Shown here piece by piece: positions 225-32,067 of a stretch of DNA of 34,761 bases. The translations under genes were made by a program, and so were the position numbers. The notes beneath the pieces were generated by a model, which saw only the letters and a program-made list of their open reading frames with translations, was not told where the DNA came from and made no database searches. The stretch's first letter is position 1; every line of letters begins with the position of its first letter. The stretch comes from Octopus sinensis (taxonomy: Eukaryota): contig NW_021831699.1 of the NCBI RefSeq assembly GCF_006345805.1, positions 1-34,761 of the forward strand, written 5' to 3'.

Positions 225-385
225 AGGCATGGCAGCGTAGTTAAGAAATTCGCTTCGCAATCACATGATTTCGAGTTCAGTTCCACAGCACACCACCTAG
301 AGCAAGTGTCATATACTATAGCCATGGGACGACCAATGCCTTGTAAGTGAATTTAGTAACCAGAAACTATAAGGAAGCCCATAGT
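225..385 (+). mobile_element. tRNA-derived SINE family A, degenerate 5' half, running into (TA)n
   Basis: Matches the head of the intact copies at 16195 and 21391-21784 (gcaagtgtc..tactatagcc..cgaccaatgccttgt.agtgaattt.gta). Confidence 0.75.
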
Positions 386-2837: not shown

Positions 2838-3103
2838 ATCCAAACATGAAAACACAAAGAGAAAAAACAACAACGCGAGGACGTGGAACAAGTATAATGT
2901 TATTGGATGCTCAGGAAAGGAAAGAAAGGCTGCGGATTTAAAGTTCGAGCGGAGCTCTTCGTCAGAAACATAAGAAAAGGAATGATCCAAGGAAGGGAAG
3001 CCGGGGGAAAAACAATCGCCAACGATACACACGCGGTCACATATTGAATATATATATATATATATATAATATATTATATATATATATATATTATATATAT
3101 ATG

Positions 3104-3223: not shown

Positions 3224-3374
3224 CATGACGGGCTTTTTTCGGTGTCCGTCTACCAAATCCACTCAGCCCGAGGTTTTAGTAGAAGACACTTGCCCAAGGT
3301 GCCACACAGTGGGACTGAACACGGAACCATGTGGCTGGGAAGCAAGCTTCTTACTACACAGTCACGCCTGCGCC
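2523..3374 (-). mobile_element. SINE family A, full length, split by microsatellite expansion and a pLTR insertion
   Basis: 3' half at 2523-2740 and 5' half at 3225-3374 both match the intact copy at 21391-21784. Confidence 0.85.
2833..3050 (-). mobile_element. PLE-type pLTR fragment (family P1) with decayed hammerhead at 2936-2969
   Basis: Homologous to 14190-14460. Minus strand GTTT-CTGACGA-A-GAGC TCC GCTC-GAAC-TTT-AAAT. TA tracts on both sides. Confidence 0.6.
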
Positions 3375-5654: not shown

Positions 5655-5885
5655 GTAGGGTGTTGCACTCACGATCGTGGTGCGTTGGGTTCTTGAGCAA
5701 AACACTTCATTTCACTAGTTACTCTAGTCCCCACATTCGATCAGGCGGGAATGTTGATCTACTCGCCTAGCCAGCCGGGTGACGTCGTTCGAAGGCTAAA
5801 ACGATTCAAAGTGCACTGTGACCAATGATGTGTAACAACTTCTGATTACCTGAGTGGTCACGTGGTCACGTGGTCATGTGGTCAT
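5655..5885 (+). mobile_element. SINE of family C type, truncated, with (GTGGTCAC)n-like tail
   Basis: gttcttgagcaaaacacttcatttcac is shared with 10136-10392; tail shared with 8432-8553. Confidence 0.6.
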
Positions 5886-5889
5886 ATAT

Positions 5890-6004
5890 ACATACGACGG
5901 GCTTCTTTCAGTTTCCGCTCACCAAATCCATTCACAAGGTTTTGATTGGCCCAAGCCTACAGTAGAAGACACTTGCCAAGTGCAACGCAGTGAGGCAAAC
6001 CCAA
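5890..6004 (-). mobile_element. SINE family A, internal 5' fragment
   Basis: acgacgggcttctttcagtttcc...caaatcca.tcacaagg...agtagaagacacttgcc. Confidence 0.75.
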
Positions 6005-6530
6005 GATATGGAGCACTTTTGATCATGGGTTTGTTCAAATTGTGTTGCCTTAGAGCTGAGCAACAAAAAGAGTTGTAAAAGCCAGTCAGACAGATTATCT
6101 AAGATGCGGTAACTTTTATGGAATGTTTGATGTTAAATCTTCAGTGTTAGTATTTTGGTAATAATTAAGTACTTGTAACTATAATCACCGATGCAATTAA
6201 CTAATTATCAAACGTCTACACAGTAATTTTGATAATGATATTGCCTTCATCAAGGAATTAATTGAAGCCATAAATCGAAATCTTGTAAATTTTTGAACCG
6301 TGAAAAAAATGTTAAAATTTGTCAAAATACCAATACTTGACTTAATCAATAATTGCTGTTTGATCACCATTAACACACTACACCTCTTCCCTTTCATTCA
6401 GGTACACACACAGACACACACACACACACACACATTGATTGCCATTTTCACAACACACACACATACGTACATAGATACATACATACATACATACATACAT
6501 ACATACATACATACATACATACATACATAC

Positions 6531-8431: not shown

Positions 8432-8553
8432 TTTGCCTGCTCACTTAGCCAGCGGGCTGGTGTCATATGAAGGCAAAAACAATGCGAAGCGCATTGTGAC
8501 CAGCGATGTGTAGCAACATCTGATAGACTGTTCGGTCACGGTGATCACGGTGA
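8432..8553 (+). mobile_element. SINE 3' tail fragment
   Basis: gcattgtgaccagcgatgtgtagcaacatctgat..ggtcacggtgatcacggtgat is homologous to 5780-5885. Confidence 0.6.
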
Positions 8554-8563
8554 TATATATATA

Positions 8564-9229
8564 TATCAGAGTAATGGCGCTAAGCAGTGTTTACGTATAA
8601 TCACAATTTAGGTTAGTTGCTAAAGGCAAATACACTGCAATTACCGTGGAGCAAAAATCTCTCTTATGATAAAATAGTGAGAAAATATCCAGTTCTTTCA
8701 GTGTCGCCCTCTCTCGGGGATCTCAGTAAACTCGAAATATCGATGTCTGAGACTCCCGAGAGAGGGCAACACTGAACGAACTGGGTGTTTTCACACCTTT
8801 TAACCATGAGATATGATATTTTTTTCTCCACAGTAATTGCAATGTATTTGCCTTTAGCAGTTGAAATATGTGACAAACCTATTTCAATTAACCTAAATCG
8901 TGATTATGCGTAAACACTGCTTAGCGCCATTACTCCGATATTTTTTCTCGATCGAGCGATTTACTAGCGCAAATCAGTCAATGTGTTGTATGACTTATAT
9001 AAAGCTATAAGCTTTATTCAGCTCGTTCAGAGTTGCTTCTTTTAGGCACATCTCATCGACAAGAGTCAATAAACTCGAAACATCGATGTCTGATATTCCC
9101 GCGAGAGGGCGACACTGGACGAATTGGGTATTTTCACACCGTTTTACCATAAGAGAGATTTTTTCTCCACATTAACTGCAGTGTATTTGCCTGTAGCAGT
9201 TGAAATATGAGACAAACTTATTTCAACTA
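8564..9229 (+). mobile_element. Non-autonomous Penelope-like mini-element: inverted pLTR + pLTR + ~110 nt body + hammerhead-bearing pLTR
   Basis: 8564-8726 is an inverted repeat of 8747-8940. 8727-8888 is a direct repeat of 9070-9229 (343 nt period). Hammerhead fold at 9050-9096. TA runs at both ends. Confidence 0.7.
9050..9096 (+). ncRNA. Type I hammerhead-like ribozyme with variant core (U3, C4, A8)
   Basis: ATCTCA-TCGACAA-GAGT caataa ACTC-GAA-ACATCGATGT-C-TGATAT; sister copies give TGAGAC/TGAGAT for the 3' strand of stem I. Confidence 0.6.
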
Positions 9230-9252
9230 CCTATATTGGTAATATATATATA

Positions 9253-9468
9253 TACCACGGAGTTCTTTCGGTTTCTATATACCGACTCCATTCTCAAGGC
9301 CCGAGACTATAATGGAAAGCACTTGCTTACGGTTCCACACAGTGAGACTGAACCCGGAACCATGTGGTTGGTAAACTTCTTACCACACAGCCACGCCTAC
9401 GCTTCAAAATTAAAAGAGAAAAAGAAAATACACTTACACAGGGAAGGTAGGTTTTTCAAGCTAAGACA
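9253..9468 (-). mobile_element. SINE family A 5' half plus unique 5' flank (copy 1 of a local duplication)
   Basis: 9290-9468 aligns with 10747-10915 across the SINE/non-SINE junction. Confidence 0.75.
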
Positions 9469-13002: not shown

Positions 13003-14093
13003 GCAGGCTACGATGGGTAAATTTCGCCATTTTATGTTTTTAAATTCGCGCATGCGCTTATCTTGTTTTTGATTTTGTCGATTACATATTATAGGATGGT
13101 CAGTTGGGCACCGTCTGTGAGAAAAACAGTACCATAACGCAATTCATTCTCCCAGAAATTTGAAAACGACATGCTGTACTGCTTGACATTCGCGCCGGTA
13201 GCTCCAATACGAGCATTTTAGAATATTTGGGTGTCAATTTGAGGACAGTGCAATCTGATGACATGCTCCGAGAGTGATAAAAATCAAACATCCAGTCAAC
13301 ATCCAGTGATGGCGACGTTGTGCATATTACATAAAAATATCTTGAAATACTAAAGAGTAAATTTATTCAATAAAATCGCCATTGGCTGCAACCACGGCTT
13401 CCAGACAACTTGGAATCTCCCATAACTCTTCTGGGCGGTCTCTATGTTTACGTTGGTGAATACTGCCATGATCCTCCTTGCCTTCAGTTCATCTTTGGTG
13501 TGTTGCAAGATGTTTTGTTGGCCTCTCGCTCAACTGCGCCCCACACATAATAATCAAGGGGGTTGCAGTCTGGAGAAGTAGGTGGACAGATGTTAACTGT
13601 GATGTGGTCTCAGAAATTGTCTGACAGCCATGACAAGGTTCTCTTGCTTGTGCGGCATGGTGCAGAATCGTGTTGCCAGATAGTGGATCTTCTAGCAGCC
13701 ACTCTCTTGACCCAGGCAGCACTAGCTCCTTCAGGCATTCGGCGTTGTAGGCCTCCGTATTGAGTCTGAGGCCGTGTGGGAAGATGAATGGAGGCACAAC
13801 GTCGCCATCACTGGATGCTGACTGGATGTTTGATTTTTATCACTCTCGGAGCATGTCATCAGATTGCACTGTCCTCGGATTGACACCCAAATATTCTGAA
13901 ATGTTCATAATGGAGCTTCCGGCGCGAATGCCAAGCAGTACAGGATGTGAATTGCGTCATGGTAGTTTTTCTCACAAACGGTGCCCAACTGACCCTACTA
14001 AACTGTGTAGTAGACAAAATCAAAAACAAACAATGCACGTACACGAAATTAAAAAAATAGTATGGCGACAATTTACCCATCTTAGCCTCTCTG
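13003..14093 (-). mobile_element. maT/mariner (DD37D) non-autonomous fold-back derivative with ~300-bp inverted arms
   Basis: Arms at 13005-13323 and 13794-14088 both start AGGCTA(C/A)GATGGGTAAATT; TA at 14094-14095; transposase relic between the arms. Confidence 0.85.
13363..13812 (-). pseudogene. DD37D transposase C-terminal catalytic region, with frameshifts and a stop
   Basis: SDGDVVPPFIFPHGLRLNTEAY..WQHDSAPC..WLSDNF*DHIT..SPDCNPLDYYVWGAVERE..VAANGDFIE*; 37 residues counted between the last two Asp. Confidence 0.85.
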
Positions 14094-14189: not shown

Positions 14190-14460
14190 GCAAATCCCTA
14201 AAGAGAAGAACCATAAACACAAAAAACACAACAACGCGAGGACGTGGTACATATAAAGTATTAGCAGACGCTCAGGGAAGGAAAGAAAGATGGTTTAACG
14301 TTTCGAGCAACGCCCCTTCTTCAGAAACAGGAAAGTCCAATAGAAAGGAAGACGGAGGAAGAAAATCGCCAACGATTCACATGTGATTACATTTTGAAAT
14401 GACCAGAAGGAAATGGGTGAAGAAAAAGTTCTTTCTAAGACAGGTGAGTGTAAGAAATGG
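14190..14460 (-). mobile_element. PLE-type pLTR fragment (family P1)
   Basis: Homologous to 2833-3050 (acaacaacgcgaggacgtgg...gctcagg.aaggaaagaaag...aaaatcgccaacga). Confidence 0.6.
14293..14328 (-). ncRNA. Minimal type I hammerhead motif
   Basis: GTTT-CTGAAGA-AG-GGGC GTT GCTC-GAA-ACGT-T-AAAC: 4-bp stem I, 4-bp stem II, palindromic ACGT stem III, GUU triplet. Confidence 0.55.
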
Positions 14461-15886
14461 AGGTATGTGCGTGCGCACAAGTCTGTGTGTGTTGTGTAAT
14501 ATCACGTGTGTGTGCGTATGTCTGTGTATGTGTTGTGTGTGTGGTGTGTGTGGTTTTGGCTGTTTATATGTGTGTGTAAGTGAACTTTGTGTCGCTTCAT
14601 GTTGTAAGAATCCAGTAGCCTTTTGCAGGAGTGGCGGTCTTTTGTGTAGTTGTGTGTCTCTTCACATCTGCATAGGGGAATGGCCAGTAGAAAGAAGTTT
14701 GACTGGCACTCTGGAGTATGTGTGCGTGTGTTAGTGTATGCGCGTATGTGTACGTGTGTGTGCATGTGGTTGTGTGTGTGGAGTATATGTGCGTTCCTCT
14801 GGGTGTGTGCGTACGTGTGCGTGCGCAAGTGTGTGTGCGTGTATGTGCGTCTGTGTATATGCCCTTGTATGGGTAATTGTGTGCGTATAAGTATGAGTGT
14901 GTTGTGTCTGTGGAAGGTATGCGTGCGTTCATGTGTGTGTATGTGTGTGCATGTGTATATGTGTGTGTGTGCGTGTGAGTATATGTATGCGTGTACTTGT
15001 GTGTGTATGTGTGTGCATGTGTATATGTGTGTGTGCGTGCGTATGTGTATCTGAACAAGGGGTTGTGTGTGGAGGTGTATGTGCGTTTCTGTGCGTGTAT
15101 GCGCGAGCGTGTGTGCGTGTGTGTGTGTATGTGTGTATAATTGTGTGTACGTGTGTGCGCGTATGTGTGCGTGTGTGTGTGTGTGTAGGAGTGTGTATGT
15201 GTGTGTGCTTCGGGTTGTGTGTGTTAGGTATGTGTACATTCTTGTGTGTTGCGCGCGTGCGTGTGTATACGCGTGTGTGTATGTGCGTGTGTATGTATGT
15301 GTGTGTATGTGTATGTGTGTGAGCGTGTATTTATATGTTGTGTTGCGTGTGTGTGTGTGTGTATATGTGTTTGTGTTCCTGTGTGTGTATATGTGTGTGC
15401 ATGTGCGTGTGTGTATGTGTGTGAGCGTGTATGTATACATTGTGTTGCGTGTGTGTGTGTATGTGTATATGTGTCTGTGTTCATGTGTGTGTATATGTGT
15501 GTGTATGTGTGTGTGTGTGTGTGCGTGGGGTTGTGTGTGGGATTGTGTGGGGGCTTATGTGTGTAGAAAATATGTGCGTACCTGAGTGTGCGCGTGCGTG
15601 TGTGATTGTGTGTGTATGAGCGTGTGTGTATGTGAGTGTGTGCGTTGGGTAGTGTTATGTGGAGGTGTATGTGCGTTCTTGTGTGCATGCGTGTGTGTGT
15701 GCGCGCGTGTATGCGCGCGTGTATGCGCGGTGTATGCGCGCGTGTGCGTGTGTATGTGTGTGCATGTATGTGCATTGTGTGTGGTGTGTGTGGGAGGTAT
15801 ATGTGCGTTCATGTGTGTGCGCGGGTGCATCTATTTTTTTCGTGTGTCTGTATATATCCGTGTGTATATGTATGTGTACGTGTGTA
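14461..15886. repeat. Complex (GT)/(AT)/(GC) alternating purine-pyrimidine tract with higher-order units
   Basis: Direct reading; recurring tggaggt(g/a)tatgtgcgttc anchor. Confidence 0.9.
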
Positions 15887-16194: not shown

Positions 16195-16559
16195 GGCGCA
16201 GGAGTGGCTGTGTGGTAAGTAGCTTGCTAACCAACACATGGTTCCGGGTCAGTCCCACTGCGTGGCATCTTGGGCAAGTGTCTTCTGCTATAGCCCCGGG
16301 CCGACCAATGCCTTGTGAGTGGATTTGGTAGACGGAATTGAATGAAGCCTGTCATATATATGTATATATATATATATGTGGGGGGATTGTGTGTCTGTTT
16401 GTCCCCTAGTGCTTGACAACCGATGCTGGCAAAGAGACGATAGAATAAGTACTGGCTTACAAAGAATAAGTCCGGGGTCGATTTGATCGACTAAAGCGGT
16501 GCTCCAGCATGGCCGCAGTCAAATGACTGAAACAAGTAAAAGAGTAAAAGAGTAAAAGA
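16195..16559 (+). mobile_element. SINE family A, near full length with a small internal deletion
   Basis: GGCGCAGGAGTGGCTGTGTGG head (A box), internal TA/GT tract, (GTAAAAGA)n tail. Confidence 0.9.
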
Positions 16560-17699: not shown

Positions 17700-19490
17700 A
17701 ACATAAATAAAAAATAAAACTAAAAACGGAAATGGCTTCCCATATTGCAATCATAGTCTGATAACACAACGCAATAGTTGCCTTAATGACGGTAATAATA
17801 ATAAATACGAACATAATTATAATGTTAAGATGGTTAAAGTTTCAAATTTGAATAAAAATAAAAATAAAAATAGAAATGTCTTTACATATTGCAATCATAG
17901 TCAAACAACACAGTACAAGGCAACTTTTAATACTAGATCTAGGATTCGTCAGGTTATTTAGTTTGTCCCACCCTTTTCATTAAGAGTGAAAGGTCTACCA
18001 AAATTATTCTTTAAATTATTAAAAGAAAACTGCCCAAAACATCATAAATATTACTCAATATGCAATAAATCATCTATAAAATTAGCTTATTCGGTAACTC
18101 CTAACCTCGGATCTATTATCGCTGCAGTGAATAGGAAAAAAATAAAATCGGATCTTTTCGGTTTGAACGGCAGTTTTTAACGTAATTTCTAGGTAACTAA
18201 AAAATTTTAAACTTCGTATACTGGTAGAATGTGTTTATAAAACATCTTTTTTTCTTTGCTTTATTGAGGAAATTCTATAGTTTGTAAGATATTTGTTGTT
18301 TTTTCTTCAATTTCTGCAATTTCAACCAATCAATTACGTCTATTGAGGTAAAAAAAAAAATTCTGTGCCGTATGAATCTGTCCCTCGTTTAAGAAACAGA
18401 TTGGGTTTATTTACATTTGTGAGGAAAAAAAGATACCTTTCCCCCACCCTAACCCTAACCCTAACCCTAAAACATTGAAATGCAATAGATCGATATTAGA
18501 ATCATAATTATGGGTGACAATTTCATATGACACCGCTAGAAAAAACTGCCGTTCAAACCGAAAAGATCCATAACATCTTTAAATGATAGAATTGATAATA
18601 AGAATGATGATAATAATAAAGATAACACACCTTATGAAATAAAATATGTAAAAGATATAGGATTGGCAGATAATATAAATAATAATAAAGGTAAAATAAA
18701 TCTAAAATTAACACGAATAAAAGTACAAATAGTATCATGAATTCTGGCATTGAAACGAAGGGAGTAACTGATATACATAATCATGCTATTAGTAAACCCC
18801 ATAAAAAATGTAATTGTAAATACCCTTTAATATGTCCGGTTAACGGAAACTGTTGCCAGCATAACGTCATATATAAATGTAGAATTGAAACACCAAATGG
18901 TCAAAACAAGATATATATTGGAAGTACAACGGATTTCAAACAAAGATATAGAAGCCATCTGAGCTCCTTTAATAATCCCAAATATAAGATATCAGCGGCA
19001 TTGGCAACATATATAAATGACCTTAAGGAAAAGGATATTACATATAGATTATCGTGGTCTATTCATGCGTACGCCCCCCCCCCCCCCTATATAGAAATGG
19101 ATCCACAGGGTGCAATTTATGCATCAGGGAAGCATACATTATATTAAAACTCTATAATCATTCCATATTGAATAAATTTACTGAATGCAATACCTGCATG
19201 TACACATAGAATCCACTCTACGTTCTTAAAAATATTTAAAAATAAAAATAAAAATAAGTGTAATAAGTAGGATTTGATCTCGGACATCTAATTTCATAAT
19301 AACAAAGGAATAAAAATTAACATGTAATAATGTTACAATAATACAAAATTCTCCAAGTATGATACTCTGTGATATAAATATGAAACGGGTACCAATAAAT
19401 GCTTTATTATTATCTCTCATTTTAGTTTTGGGCTGCAGGCCCATTTAGCCCTCCGCAGGAGCTAGCACCAAATCACCACGGGGTGCGGCT
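17700..19490 (+). pseudogene. Penelope-like element 3' fragment (Naiad-like linker + GIY-YIG endonuclease), interrupted by a MITE
   Basis: RQVI*FVPPFS..FKLLKENCPKHHKYYSICNKSSIKLAYSVTPNLGSII..KCNCKYPLICPVNGNCCQHNVIYKC..IYIGSTTDFKQRYRSH..(frameshift in C14 at 19074-19087) PYRNGSTGCNLCIREAYII. Confidence 0.85.
18150..18569. mobile_element. MITE, 29-bp perfect TIRs starting GG, 8-bp TSD (Merlin-like), internal (CCCTAA)4
   Basis: GGATCTTTTCGGTTTGAACGGCAGTTTTT at 18150-18178 and its reverse complement at 18541-18569; flanks ATAAAATC (18142-18149) and ATAACATC (18570-18577). Confidence 0.85.
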
Positions 19491-21390: not shown

Positions 21391-21784
21391 TACTCTTTAC
21401 TCTTTTACTTGTTTCAGTCATTTGACTGCGGCCATGCTGGAGCACCCCTTTTAGTCGAGCAAATCGACCCCAGGACTTATTCTTTGTAAGCCTAGTACAT
21501 ATTCTATCGGTCTCTTTTGCCGAACCGCTAAGTTACGGGGACATGAACACACCAGCATCGGTTGTCAAGCGATGTTGGGAGGACAAACACAGACACACAA
21601 ACACACACATATACATATACACGACAGGCTTCTTTCAGTTTCCATCTACCAAATCCACTCACAAGGCTTTGGTCGGCCCGAGGCTATAGTAGAAGACACT
21701 TGCTCAAAGTGCCACGCAGTGGGACTGAACCCAGAACCATGTGGTTGGTAAGCAAGCTACTTACCACACAGCCACTCCTGCGCC
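21391..21784 (-). mobile_element. SINE family A, intact full-length copy
   Basis: Complete head (A and B boxes), short internal microsatellite, (AAGAGTAA)-type tail. Confidence 0.9.
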
Positions 21785-24605: not shown

Positions 24606-25210
24606 AGAAGCTTGCTTCACAATCACATGGTTCTGGGTTCAGTCCCACTGCATGGCACCTTGGGCAAGTGTCTTCTACAATAACCTCGGGCCAATTAAAA
24701 ACTTGTGAGTGAATTTAGTAGACGGAAACCTAAAGAAGCCCGTCGTATATATATATATTTGTTATTTGTGTCTGTGTTTGCCCCACTACCACCACCACCA
24801 TCGCTTGACAACCGATATTGATGTATTTACGTCCTCGCAACTTAGTGGTTCGGGACAAAGAAACCGATCGCAAGGCAAAATGCCGGGCGAAATGCGTAGC
24901 CGTATTTCGTCTGCCGTTACGTTCTGAGTTCAAATTCCGCCGAGGTCGACTTTGCCTTTCATCCTTTCGGGGTCGATAAATTAAGTACCAGTTACGCACT
25001 AGGGTCGATATAATCGACTTAATCCGTTTGTCTGTCTTTGTTTGTCCCCTCTGTATGTAGCCCCTTGTGGGTAGTAAAGAAATAAGAAACCGATCGAATA
25101 AGTACTATGCTTACAAAGAATAAGTCCCGAGTCGATTTGTTCGACTTAATGTGGTGTTCCAGCATGGCCGCAGTCAAATGATTGAAACAACTAAAAGAAT
25201 AAAAGAATAA
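24606..25210 (+). mobile_element. SINE family A interrupted by a SINE family B insertion
   Basis: A-family sequence resumes exactly after the duplicated AAGAAACCGATCG. Confidence 0.85.
24871..25083 (+). mobile_element. SINE family B, 5'-truncated, 13-bp TSD
   Basis: AAGAAACCGATCG at 24858-24870 and 25084-25096. Confidence 0.9.
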
Positions 25211-28500: not shown

Positions 28501-28988
28501 ATAGTTATGGATTCTTGTCTATGATTGTTTAAGCAGCAGTAGTAGTAAAGGAAGTGGGTGGCCGAGAATAATAATAAGAAGAAGAATTATAAAAGAATGC
28601 TGGAGTGGTTTGATAGTAGTAGGATGTTAAATGGTCAAGTGCCCTGAAAGTGACCTGTTGTGGATGATAGTAGTGATTGGGACTGTTTTTAATTAATTCT
28701 TGGGGTATCTCTTTTGAATGTATCATTTTTAATATTTTAATATATCCACGCAAATATTAAAAATGATACATTCAAAAGAGATACCTCAAGAATTAATTAA
28801 AAACAGTCCCAATCACTACTATCATCCACAACAGGTCACTTTCAGGGCACTTTACCATTTAACATCCTACTACTATCATACCACTCCAGCATTCTTTTAT
28901 AATTCTTCTTATTACTATTATTCTCGGCCACCCACTTCCTTTACTACTACTGCTGCTTAAACAATCATAGACAAGAATCCATAACTAT
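28501..28988. repeat. 237-bp-arm inverted repeat, 14-nt spacer (probable inverted pLTR pair)
   Basis: 28501-28737 versus 28752-28988, about six mismatches by eye; the start of the right arm also occurs at 28414-28440, just after the PLE ORF. Confidence 0.85.
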
Positions 28989-30269: not shown

Positions 30270-32067
30270 CTATTGGTCGATGAAAAATATCAGACAAAAT
30301 ACAATCTTTTTACCCGTAACACTGTGTGATACTTTTATAGATTTACTTAATTTTGGCTTACCTATATACTTCCAAGTTTCTTCACTCACAGTGGTAATAC
30401 CACTTCCAGTGTCTAACTACATTTTTACACTTCTATTTTCAATTTTTACATTTACAAATTTCCTCTTTGTCACATTACCATTTTCTTTCCATGACATCTT
30501 GCTTATTCTTTTTCCTTTGTTCCAACGTTTTGTCATCTTGGCTTTACAGTGCGCTGTTACGTGTCCAATTTCTCCACAACGGAAGCATTCCGTTTTCTTA
30601 AGTGGACAGTTTTTTTCTCAGATGTAGACCTCTACATGCCAAACATGGGTTTGTTTCCTGATTTTTGTCCTGTTTGTATTGTATTTTAGTACATACTTGA
30701 TTTCTTTTCTGCGTATCTCGCACTTTCGCACGCACTTGTTTCACTTGGGAGCAATCTTTATGTTCAATTTTCTCTGTGTCGTGTCTTAAATTTACTATTC
30801 TTCCACACTCTTCTGATACTTATTGTAAGGTTACAGCTTAGTTTTGTTCCAGCTTAGCGAGAATTCTTGTTCTTGCTTCTGCGTCTTTTTCTGCAGTTAG
30901 TCCCTGAGTAAATACCAGGCACTTGAACATATCTAGCGCTAATTCGTCCAGTTTGAGCTTTTCACATTCTCTCTTAACTCTGCCAGCACATGTGATGCAG
31001 TCCTCCTTGTTGTCCTTTTCTTGGTTCAAACATTTCCAGCGTGTATTGAACAACGAGCTTTTCTCGCTACAAATTTTACACAATATGTCTATTGTATTTT
31101 TAAAGTTTATGTCAAGAGGTTTTTTCGGGAGTATGTAATTTCTGTAGCGCTCATGTTCCCCTGCTGCCAGTTTCCTTATTATTAGGTGCGTTTTCATATC
31201 GTCTTCCCAATCTTTGCGCTCTTTATTGAAGTTCTGTTCGTATCTTTTAAAGTACGCCTCGAAGGTAACTCCTTCGACAGGTTCATACTTAAATTTTGTT
31301 ATCGAGTTCGCAATATAATCTGGCCGGAACATCTTTTCGGCATTTTCTGACGATTTACTATTCATTAATTACAGAATTTATTGCTGTAATAGTGATTGTT
31401 ATTGTTGTTGCTTCTGCTGTTGTCTTCTTCTTCTTCTTCTACTTCTTCTTCTTCTTCTTCTTTTTCTTCTAATCAGGACTCACGCAATTAGCCACAAAGA
31501 ATAATCTCTAATTCGAGCCAACTCTAAGTTACAAAGAATGCGTGTGGCAACTTGAAGATCCACCCACCACACGCGATAGACTGGCAGTTGCACGGGCGCT
31601 AAAGCTACGTTGTTATCCTCATTCTGTAAACGGTGGCTTTTAACGGGTGGAGAGTTAAATCATCCTGGGGTACTGAGGATTCGCAATCTAGACTAGGGTC
31701 TGAAAGTTTACCACACCATAGTGATTACACCATGGTTCCTCTGCTTGGTAGCAGAAGTAGGAAAAAAAAGTGAGAAAAGGTTGTGGTGAAAGAGCACAGC
31801 GGGCTTCACACACACACATACACACACACACGGAGCCTCGTGATTTTGTTAATTCCTCGATGCCACTATTTTAATCCTTTGTTGGACTGTTATCACGTCC
31901 ATTCCGGTATAGCAGTATAGTTAGTTGGATAAGCTAGACCACGACTGTCTATGACCGTCTACTTCGTACTTTCTCCTTATACTGGCAGTATTTATAATGA
32001 TTATCACATACCACTCATCACGTGGGAGGGGTGTACCATTACTACTATTATACCCATAAGAGAAACA
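30270..32067 (-). mobile_element. Ty3/gypsy LTR retrotransposon 5' remnant: putative LTR, PBS, gag with two Zn knuckles, aspartic protease
   Basis: gag-like ORF 31365-30838; CLACRGLH..CP and CFRCGEIGHVTAHC at 30644-30546; LDTGSGITTVSEETWKYIGKP from 30416; PBS-like TGGCATCGAGG at 31865-31855. The LTR limit is tentative. Confidence 0.8.

What the first reader, a model, noticed from the sequence alone, without database searches (positions are those of the whole stretch)
9050..9096. Variant hammerhead: U3-A8 compensatory swap, C4, 10-nt palindromic stem III and a possible off-switch
Seen: every helix and G5, A6, A9, G10.1-C11.1, G12-A13-A14, A15.1-U16.1 and GUC are in register, but the core reads UCGACAA instead of CUGANGA. 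Known: positions 3 and 8 form a tertiary pair, so C3U with G8A is compensatory; U4C is an additional deviation. Stem III ACAUCGAUGU is a perfect palindrome. CATCGA (9054-9059) can alternatively pair with TCGATG (9083-9088), sequestering the core in the monomer; dimerisation through the palindrome would free it (inference). Canonical motif scans would miss this. I cannot tell whether this exact variant has been reported.
Basis: partly seen in the sequence, partly recalled or inferred. Interest (0 to 1): 0.85.

Follow-up and report, generated by a model that had tools for sequence, protein, structure and literature searches.

The report
Hammerhead-like ribozyme relic in octopus repeat
The 47-base motif is real and is most likely the self-cleaving (hammerhead) end of a small 343-base mobile repeat fossilised in an octopus genome, but its odd catalytic core is seen in one decayed copy only, and two of its three claimed novelties are already published.

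Summary
The context is more informative than the motif. The site is the 3' end of a 343-nt, 38% GC repeat unit (8748-9090). That unit lies in one complex insertion (about 8567-9237): an inverted partial unit, the last 21 nt of a unit, a full unit and a partial unit. The insertion sits in the (TA)n tail of a SINE and has an ~18-bp target duplication. Helix I (6 bp against the three-copy consensus UGAGAU), helix II (4 bp) and a short palindromic helix III match the canonical metazoan type I hammerhead of non-LTR retrozymes. With the consensus helix I, the predicted dimer minimum-energy fold is exactly the double hammerhead.

U3-A8 covariation and dimer activation through a palindromic helix III are published. 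Only C4 is unusual. The UCGACAA box exists once here, in a copy about 8% diverged, and the only other copy is cut off inside loop 2. No other family copies could be fetched, so conservation is untested. I read it as a fossil retrozyme-like hammerhead of the U3-A8 class (confidence 0.55). An active, family-wide C4 variant remains possible (about 0.2).

The parts
8549..8566 (.). Left copy of the putative target-site duplication GGTRAT(AT)6. It lies in the (TA)n tail of a pre-existing SINE-type repeat.
   Evidence: Direct repeat with 9238-9257 (D3). The joined flanks align colinearly with the uninterrupted paralogue at 5800-6010.
8563..8726 (-). L0: an inverted partial copy of the repeat unit, covering unit positions 0/1 to about 196. 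Its inner end lies within 1 nt of the predicted cleavage site.
   Evidence: Inverted repeats I1-I4. Alignment to the unit, 87% identity to R1.
8727..8747 (+). The last 21 nt of a unit (TAAACTCGAAATATCGATGTC): the 3' part of loop 2, the helix II 3' strand, GAA, helix III and C17. The 5' box is missing because the inverted copy starts here.
   Evidence: 20 of 21 bases identical to 9070-9090. The single difference, C15.2 to U, keeps the pair as U-G.
8748..9090 (+). One complete repeat unit of 343 nt, GC 0.38, running from one predicted cleavage site to the next.
   Evidence: Spacing of 339-343 between direct repeats D1 and D2. Alignments. Folding z-score -3.0 to -3.5.
9019..9036 (+). Strand of a closing stem that pairs with unit positions 19-36 (8766-8783), beyond helix I and an internal loop.
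   Evidence: I12, 18 nt, 89% complementary. Alignment z-score 4.4, while the rest of 8942-9015 shows no similarity to the arms. Present in the minimum-energy fold.
9050..9055 (+). Helix I, 5' strand: AUCUCA.
   Evidence: Pairs 6 of 6 with UGAGAU, the consensus of the three copies of the unit start (TGAGAC, TGAGAT, TGATAT). Pairs 5 of 6 with this copy's own UGAUAU.
9056..9062 (+). The 5' catalytic box UCGACAA (U3 C4 G5 A6 C7 A8 A9). This is the only copy in the window.
   Evidence: (unique at up to 3 mismatches).
9063..9076 (+). Helix II (GAGU/ACUC, 4 bp, G10.1-C11.1) with the 6-nt loop 2, CAAUAA.
9077..9090 (+). G12-A13-A14, then helix III (ACAUCGAUGU, a 10-nt palindrome; 3 bp plus a UCGA loop in the monomer), then C17. 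The predicted cleavage site is between 9090 and 9091.
   Evidence: The intermolecular 10-bp helix III is part of the dimer minimum-energy fold.
9091..9237 (+). R2: a partial next unit (positions 1 to about 150). Its first 6 nt, UGAUAU, are the helix I 3' strand.
   Evidence: 83% identical to R1. It ends at the right-hand target duplication.
9238..9255 (.). Right copy of the putative target-site duplication. The SINE body continues from about 9258.
   Evidence: SINE homology for 9296-9407 (D18). The same SINE is 90% identical to O. bimaculoides locus L001.

Best explanation
The motif is the ribozyme domain at the 3' end of a 343-nt retrozyme-like repeat: a non-autonomous element with a type I hammerhead, of the kind thought to be mobilised by Penelope-like elements, in an octopod genome. 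Shown: the locus is one old, complex retro-insertion into the (TA)n tail of a SINE. It consists of an inverted partial unit, 21 nt of a unit's end, a full unit and a partial unit. Inferred mechanism for the family: tandem units are transcribed. In a single unit, CAUCGA pairs with UCGAUG and locks the core. Two units pair through the palindromic helix III into a double hammerhead and cut after GUC (equivalent to 9090/9091). The released 343-nt RNA can be circularised and reverse-transcribed into AT-rich microsatellites. The core belongs to the known U3-A8 covariation class. C4 is either a change private to this roughly 8% decayed copy or was already in the source RNA, and the window cannot decide between these. 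This genomic copy is a fossil and is probably weak or inactive: it has C4, and its own helix I has a mismatch.
For: All helices and 11 of 14 conserved positions are in register, against a chance expectation of 0.03 per window. It is the only hit in the window and in 20.6 kb of O. bimaculoides DNA. Helix I of 6 bp, helix II of 4 bp and a short helix III with a palindromic loop are the published canonical metazoan type I architecture (PMC4209133). The unit size (343 bp), GC (0.38) and tandem layout match non-LTR retrozymes: 150-450 bp, low GC, and 350-390 bp in mussels (PMC7229834). AUCUCA pairs 6 of 6 with the three-copy consensus UGAGAU. With that consensus, the RNAcofold minimum-energy dimer is exactly the double hammerhead: -26.7 kcal/mol against 2 x -9.8. 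The inverted copy L0 ends within 1 nt of the predicted cleavage site. The locus is an insertion into (TA)n with a target duplication, which fits the AT-rich cleavage and extension of both strands reported for a PLE protein (PMC11167929) and the inverted/tandem PLE arrangements (PMC8557442). PLE remnants and two canonical-core PLE min-hammerheads lie in the same window. The copies are 7-10% diverged. My own estimates from that divergence: three specific transitions from CUGANGA have a probability of about 1e-4, while a single U4-to-C change from UUGACAA is about 0.03-0.04.
Against: The 5' box occurs once and deviates at 3 of 6 invariant positions. U4C is reported to lower activity considerably in vitro (PMC3088659). 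No Rfam hammerhead hit. The monomer fold favours the non-hammerhead hairpin by about 7 kcal/mol. The minus strand of the unit folds at least as well as the plus strand (z -4.9 against -3.5), so there is no strand-specific structural signal. The L0 boundary can also be explained by fold-back priming on a 4-nt complementarity (TCAA/TCAG), which needs no RNA cleavage. No other family copy could be retrieved, so there is no covariation evidence and no expression evidence.
Confidence: 0.55

Rival explanations
1. One reading: UCGACAA (U3-C4-A8) is the family consensus and is an active natural hammerhead core variant, held off in monomers by the CAUCGA/UCGAUG helix and switched on by dimerisation.
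For: With 7-10% decay per copy, an unchanged box is about 20 times more likely than a specific U4-to-C hit (my estimate). The CpG at C4-G5 has survived. C4 turns a U-G pair into a C-G pair in the alternative helix (base-pairing rules applied to the sequence; the alternative helix itself is shown). The double hammerhead is the dimer minimum-energy fold. A natural U4C viroid variant stays infectious (PMC3088659).
Against: There is a single copy and no conservation data. U4 is otherwise invariant, and U4C lowers activity considerably in vitro (PMC3088659). In vitro insertion by one PLE protein (from the green anole) did not need hammerhead activity (PMC11167929). If that holds for retrozyme-like repeats, a dead core could still be copied.
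Confidence: 0.2
2. There is no ribozyme. The resemblance is a by-product of an imperfect hairpin or palindrome (CATCGA..GAGT / ACTC..TCGATG) of the kind made at retro-insertion junctions, lying inside a self-complementary repeat.
For: The minimum-energy fold is that hairpin. A similar hairpin apex sits at the L0/R1 junction (third fold). Three core positions deviate, and Rfam finds nothing. At 0.03 chance hits per 35 kb, a genome of gigabase size (my assumption for an octopus) would hold thousands of chance hits.
Against: A hairpin does not explain several features: GAA, A15.1-U16.1 and C17 in register, the box of exactly 7 nt, the 10-nt palindrome shared by both copies, the 6/6 helix I against the consensus, the 6-bp and 4-bp helix sizes, the position at the unit boundary, or the double-hammerhead dimer fold. 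The sequence upstream (8942-9015) is not an inverted copy of the arms.
Confidence: 0.2
3. It is a canonical CUGANGA hammerhead that decayed after insertion.
For: The locus is old, with 13-17% pairwise divergence between copies.
Against: This needs three specific transitions within 6 positions, two of which happen to restore a 3-8 pair, while the 10 flanking helix bases stay intact. My estimate of the probability is about 1e-4 at the measured divergence.
Confidence: 0.03

Closest known systems
Metazoan non-LTR retrozymes and satellite-type repeats with type I hammerheads (newt satellite 2, Mytilus, Acropora and axolotl retrozymes; PMC7229834)
   Same: A short tandem unit (343 bp), low GC and a self-paired unit RNA. 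Type I topology, with helix I leading into a closing stem. Helix I of 6 bp, helix II of 4 bp and a short helix III with a palindromic tetraloop. Predicted activity as a dimer.
   Different: The 5' box is UCGACAA, not CUGANGA. Only 1.5 units plus an inverted copy are present, not a long array. There is no evidence of expression or circular RNA. I found no report of a cephalopod family in the papers searched.
PLE min-hammerheads with U3-A8 covariation (Schistosoma Cercyon and about 1,300 related motifs; PMC4209133). Natural U3-A8 examples are also reported in PMC3088659.
   Same: U3 paired with A8. Association with PLE-rich genomes. The insertion style: AT-rich microsatellite targets and inverted plus tandem copies.
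   Different: Those motifs lack helix III or have 1-2 bp. They have a long helix II (6-8 bp) with a bulged base after A9, they keep U4, and they sit in the pseudo-LTRs of elements that encode reverse transcriptase and endonuclease.
Natural U4C viroid hammerhead variant (cited in PMC3088659)
   Same: C at position 4 in a natural hammerhead that is still biologically tolerated.
   Different: It is a single change; I recall it as a viroid hammerhead with a C3-G8 core and type III topology, which I did not check. It is reported to have considerably reduced in vitro activity.
Double-hammerhead mechanism (Forster et al. 1988, as described in PMC4209133, PMC7229834 and PMC6765202)
   Same: A weak or palindromic helix III makes monomers inactive. 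Two copies form an extended helix III and cut.
   Different: Here the monomer is additionally locked by a 6-bp helix between bases 2.2 to A6 and the 3' half of helix III. The lock is predicted by folding only.

Membership tests
Hammerhead ribozyme, type I | Three helices around the core, with helix I open | tested here: met
   The descriptor scan finds helices I, II and III in register. The helix sizes of 6 bp, 4 bp and 3 bp plus tetraloop match the canonical metazoan type I motif (PMC4209133).
Hammerhead ribozyme, type I | Invariant core: C3 U4 G5 A6 G8 A9 / G12 A13 A14 / A15.1-U16.1 / H17 | tested here: not met
   G5, A6, A9, G12-A14, A15.1-U16.1 and C17 are present. U3, C4 and A8 deviate. 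U3-A8 is a documented covariation (PMC3088659, PMC4209133). C4 is not part of any accepted consensus.
Hammerhead ribozyme, type I | Match to the curated covariance models (Rfam hammerhead families) | tested here: not met
   No hit at the gathering threshold or at E<=10. Caveat: a canonical-core PLE min-hammerhead in the same window is missed as well.
Hammerhead ribozyme, type I | Conservation and covariation across family copies | tested here: inconclusive
   There is one copy of the 5' box, two of the 3' half (20 of 21 identical, with C-G changed to U-G in helix III) and three of the helix I 3' strand. No external copies were retrievable.
Hammerhead ribozyme, type I | Self-cleavage 3' of position 17 | not testable with these tools
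   Indirect evidence only: the inverted copy ends within 1 nt of the predicted site, and fold-back priming could also explain that.
Non-LTR retrozyme (metazoan) | Short tandem repeat of 150-450 bp with low GC | tested here: met
   343-bp unit, GC 0.38, one full and two partial units. The array is minimal.
Non-LTR retrozyme (metazoan) | Each unit carries a type I hammerhead, and the unit RNA is highly self-paired | tested here: inconclusive
   There is one hammerhead-like motif with a deviant core. The unit fold has z -3.0 to -3.5, but the minus strand has z -4.9.
Non-LTR retrozyme (metazoan) | Expressed as linear and circular unit-length RNAs | not testable with these tools
   No transcriptome data are available here.
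PLE pseudo-LTR min-hammerhead | Located in the pseudo-LTR of an element encoding reverse transcriptase and GIY-YIG endonuclease; little or no helix III; long helix II with a bulge after A9 | tested here: not met
   No PLE reading frame is adjacent. The nearest GIY-YIG remnant is at 18737-19147. Helix II is 4 bp with no bulge, and helix III is present.

The most novel reading that the evidence does not exclude
UCGACAA is the consensus of a cephalopod retrozyme family, and that family self-cleaves as a double hammerhead. This would be a natural hammerhead core with C4 in a U3-A8 background, in which C4 also strengthens a 6-bp helix that locks the monomer, so one base tunes both catalysis and the monomer/dimer switch.
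Probability: 0.2. Interest if true: 0.55.

Novelty: new member of a known kind. Interest (0 to 1): 0.35.

Why it matters
If the family exists genome-wide, it would add cephalopods to the animals that carry retrozyme-type circular-RNA elements. It would also give a natural test of how much variation the hammerhead uridine turn (position 4) tolerates when positions 3 and 8 covary. As it stands, the locus is a well-preserved example of a complex retro-insertion (inverted plus tandem copies) into a microsatellite, of the kind reported for PLEs. Its ribozyme end is visible, but the locus alone does not establish a new catalytic variant.

Tried and rejected
1. Rfam scans of the window, of 2.5 kb and of 76 nt found no hammerhead. 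The control on the canonical-core min-hammerhead was also negative, so these results are uninformative.

2. External copies by DNA pattern: viral, metagenome and GTDB contig scans with three patterns all returned zero. These collections hold no cephalopod genomes.

3. External copies through protein space, using reading frames across the element: the search for homologous proteins found nothing. The full HMMER search returned four hits that are leucine-rich-repeat or other repeat proteins matching 'PLAGISD..SSLL' by composition, not homologues.

4. The PLE GIY-YIG reading frame as bait gave no hits. The DUF7083 reading frame identified the lineage (75% identity to an O. bimaculoides protein). 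The two loci fetched from it (L001, L002) hold no copy of the unit. The window's own gene is not on record.

5. A model of tandem fold-back or MITE units in which the left arm L1 is homologous to L0: rejected. Region 8942-9015 has no similarity to L0 or to the reverse complement of R (z about 0).

6. A decayed canonical core: rejected on the measured divergence.

7. A ribozyme on the minus strand: the relaxed scan finds none.

8. Plus-strand-specific structure, judged by a G-U asymmetry proxy: not seen, as the minus strand folds better.

9. Pfam scan of six-frame translations around the GIY-YIG remnant: the tool refuses translations with stop codons. The translations look non-coding by eye, and I did not pursue this.

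Full report
OBSERVATION. They read AUCUCA (helix I, 5' strand, 9050-9055), UCGACAA (9056-9062) and GAGU-CAAUAA-ACUC (helix II and loop 2, 9063-9076). Then come GAA (9077-9079), ACAUCGAUGU (a 10-nt perfect palindrome, 9080-9089), C17 (9090) and UGAUAU (9091-9096). Helix I has one C/U mismatch. I wrote a type I descriptor that fixes only G5, A6 and A9 in the 5' box. It also requires helix I of at least 4 of 5 pairs, helix II of at least 4 bp, GAA, helix III of at least 3 bp closed by A15.1-U16.1, and H17. It finds exactly this site on both strands of the window. Its mean over 100 dinucleotide shuffles is 0.03 hits. It finds nothing in 20.6 kb of Octopus bimaculoides DNA. Rfam gives no hammerhead hit at any threshold. 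It also misses a canonical-core PLE min-hammerhead in this window, so I give that negative little weight. The alternative pairing of 9054-9059 with 9083-9088 is the monomer minimum-energy fold: -9.4 kcal/mol, against -2.2 for the hammerhead fold.

WHOSE DNA. The window is eukaryotic, with many microsatellites and SINE copies. A DUF7083 reading frame (30838-31365, minus strand) is 75% identical to an O. bimaculoides protein. The window's SINE is 90% identical to copies in the fetched O. bimaculoides locus L001. The source is therefore an octopod close to Octopus.

ANATOMY OF THE LOCUS. The motif is not isolated.
- Direct repeats 8723-8811/9066-9154 (87%) and 8820-8890/9159-9229 (90%) are spaced 339-343 nt apart. 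Inverted repeats link 8563-8726 to 8747-8941 and to 9090-9198.
- Alignments resolve the layout as follows:
  - L0 (8563-8726) is an inverted copy of unit positions 0/1 to about 196.
  - 8727-8747 is the last 21 nt of a unit.
  - 8748-9090 is one full unit of 343 nt with GC 0.38.
  - R2 (9091-9237) is a partial unit covering positions 1 to about 150.
- The 3' third of the unit (8942-9015) has no similarity to the arms (z about 0). Only 9015-9036 is complementary to unit positions 19-36 (z 4.4). This rules out a simple tandem of fold-back units and looks like a closing stem beyond helix I.
- Joining the flanks (8480-8566 plus 9256-9420) gives a sequence colinear with an uninterrupted paralogue at 5800-6010. 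So about 8567-9237 is an insertion into the (TA)n tail of a SINE-type repeat, with a duplicated GGTRAT(AT)6 on each side.
- A mix of inverted and partial-tandem copies at a microsatellite is the published signature of Penelope-like element (PLE) insertions (PMC8557442). It also fits the cleavage of AT-rich DNA and the extension of both strands shown for a purified PLE protein (PMC11167929).
- The window also holds a GIY-YIG endonuclease remnant (18737-19147) and two canonical-core PLE-type min-hammerheads on the minus strand. Those two belong to a different repeat family.

WHY I THINK IT DERIVES FROM A HAMMERHEAD.
1. Helix I of 6 bp, helix II of 4 bp and a short helix III capped by a palindromic loop are the described canonical metazoan type I architecture (PMC4209133).
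2. The unit matches non-LTR retrozymes in size, GC content and tandem layout: 150-450 bp and low GC in general, and 350-390 bp in mussels (PMC7229834).
3. The unit start occurs three times, as TGAGAC, TGAGAT and TGATAT. Its consensus, UGAGAU, pairs 6 of 6 with AUCUCA, so the mismatch is private to R2.
4. With that consensus, the RNAcofold minimum-energy structure of two 47-mers is exactly the double hammerhead: -26.7 kcal/mol against 2 x -9.8 for monomers.
5. The predicted cleavage site coincides with the unit boundary. The inner end of L0 lies within 1 nt of it, as expected if a cDNA ran to the 5' end of a self-cleaved RNA. This last point is an inference. Fold-back priming on the 4-nt complementarity TCAA/TCAG would give the same junction without cleavage.

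A plain hairpin (CAUCGA..GAGU / ACUC..UCGAUG) explains helix II and the monomer fold. It does not explain GAA, A15.1-U16.1 and C17 in register, the 7-nt box, the shared 10-nt palindrome, the 6/6 helix I, or the position at the unit boundary.

THE CORE.
- U3-A8 is a known natural covariation (PMC3088659). About 1,300 such motifs were found in Schistosoma PLE-type hammerheads (PMC4209133).
- Dimer-only activity through a short palindromic helix III is long established (Forster 1988, as described in PMC4209133, PMC7229834 and PMC6765202).
- That leaves C4. U4C is described as considerably lowering in vitro activity while still permitting viroid infectivity (PMC3088659).
- The window holds only one 5' box, because the other copy of the motif is cut in loop 2 by the junction with L0.
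- The three copies differ by 13-17% pairwise, with 7-10% private changes each in a star-like pattern.
- My estimates at that divergence are as follows. Decay from CUGANGA needs three specific transitions, with probability about 1e-4, and is effectively excluded. Decay from UUGACAA needs one, about 0.03-0.04. No change at all is about 0.65.
- Weighing those figures against the rarity of C4 in functional hammerheads, I cannot separate 'U3-A8 class with a private U4C hit' from 'C4 already in the source RNA'.
- One PLE protein inserted RNA in vitro without hammerhead activity (PMC11167929). If that holds here, a C4 in the source would not by itself prove function.

WHAT FAILED. No further copy of the unit could be retrieved. 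DNA pattern scans of the viral, metagenome and prokaryote collections returned nothing. Searches in protein space with reading frames across the element returned nothing or spurious repeat proteins. The two fetched loci lack the unit. The unit's minus strand folds at least as well as the plus strand, so there is no strand-specific structural signal.

VERDICT.
- Best reading (0.55): a fossil copy of a retrozyme-like, type I hammerhead repeat of the U3-A8 class, in which the monomer is locked and the dimer is active, as in known families.
- A non-ribozyme hairpin: about 0.2.
- A decayed canonical core: about 0.03.

Novelty is modest. This is probably a new (cephalopod) member of a known kind, with a possible new core variant that a genome-wide alignment would settle quickly.

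Noticed in passing
window 14293-14328 (-): A PLE-type min-hammerhead with a canonical core: GUUU|CUGAAGA|A(G)|GGGC-GUU-GCUC|GAAAC-GUU|AAAC. It has no helix III and a bulged base after A9. It lies in a short repeat flanked by (GT)n/(CA)n microsatellites. Rfam does not detect it.
   Followed up: partly
window 2936-2969 (-): A second copy of the same min-hammerhead repeat family, with an intact CUGACGA box and a decayed 3' box (GAAC-UUU). The flanks of the two copies align at 77% mean column identity. The copy sits between (CA)n and (TA)n tracts.
   Followed up: partly
window 18737-19147 (+), and 18446-18470: A 136-aa reading frame with a Cys-rich stretch and a GIY-YIG domain (Pfam E=4.7e-5), which I read as a Penelope-like element endonuclease remnant. 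No reverse-transcriptase reading frame is recognisable on either side. (ACCCTA)4, a reverse-complement telomere-type repeat, lies about 270 bp upstream.
   Followed up: partly
window 30838-31365 (-): A DUF7083 reading frame, 75% identical to O. bimaculoides LOC106879270. In O. bimaculoides the homologue sits next to an RVT_1 reading frame, so it is probably the gag-like part of a retrotransposon.
   Followed up: partly
window 28501-28988: A near-perfect palindrome: 237-nt arms, 98% complementary, 14-nt spacer. Its nature is unknown (a young fold-back or an inverted duplication).
   Followed up: no
window 13019-14073: Nested long inverted repeats (13169-13323/13794-13948 at 94%; 13019-13127/13965-14073 at 80%) bounded by (TA)n and (GT)n tracts, next to the min-hammerhead at 14293-14328. 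This may be another head-to-head retro-insertion.
   Followed up: no
window 274-365, 16246-16337, 24636-24727; 3263-3374, 9296-9407, 21673-21784: Many copies, in both orientations, of one or two SINE-type repeats (the two coordinate groups were not linked to each other). Copies of the second group have (TA)n/GTGGTCAY tails. A copy of that group is 90% identical to copies in O. bimaculoides.
   Followed up: partly
window 14932-15792: About 860 bp of degenerate (TG)n-rich sequence with strong GC skew (+0.64) and 104-bp higher-order repeats.
   Followed up: no
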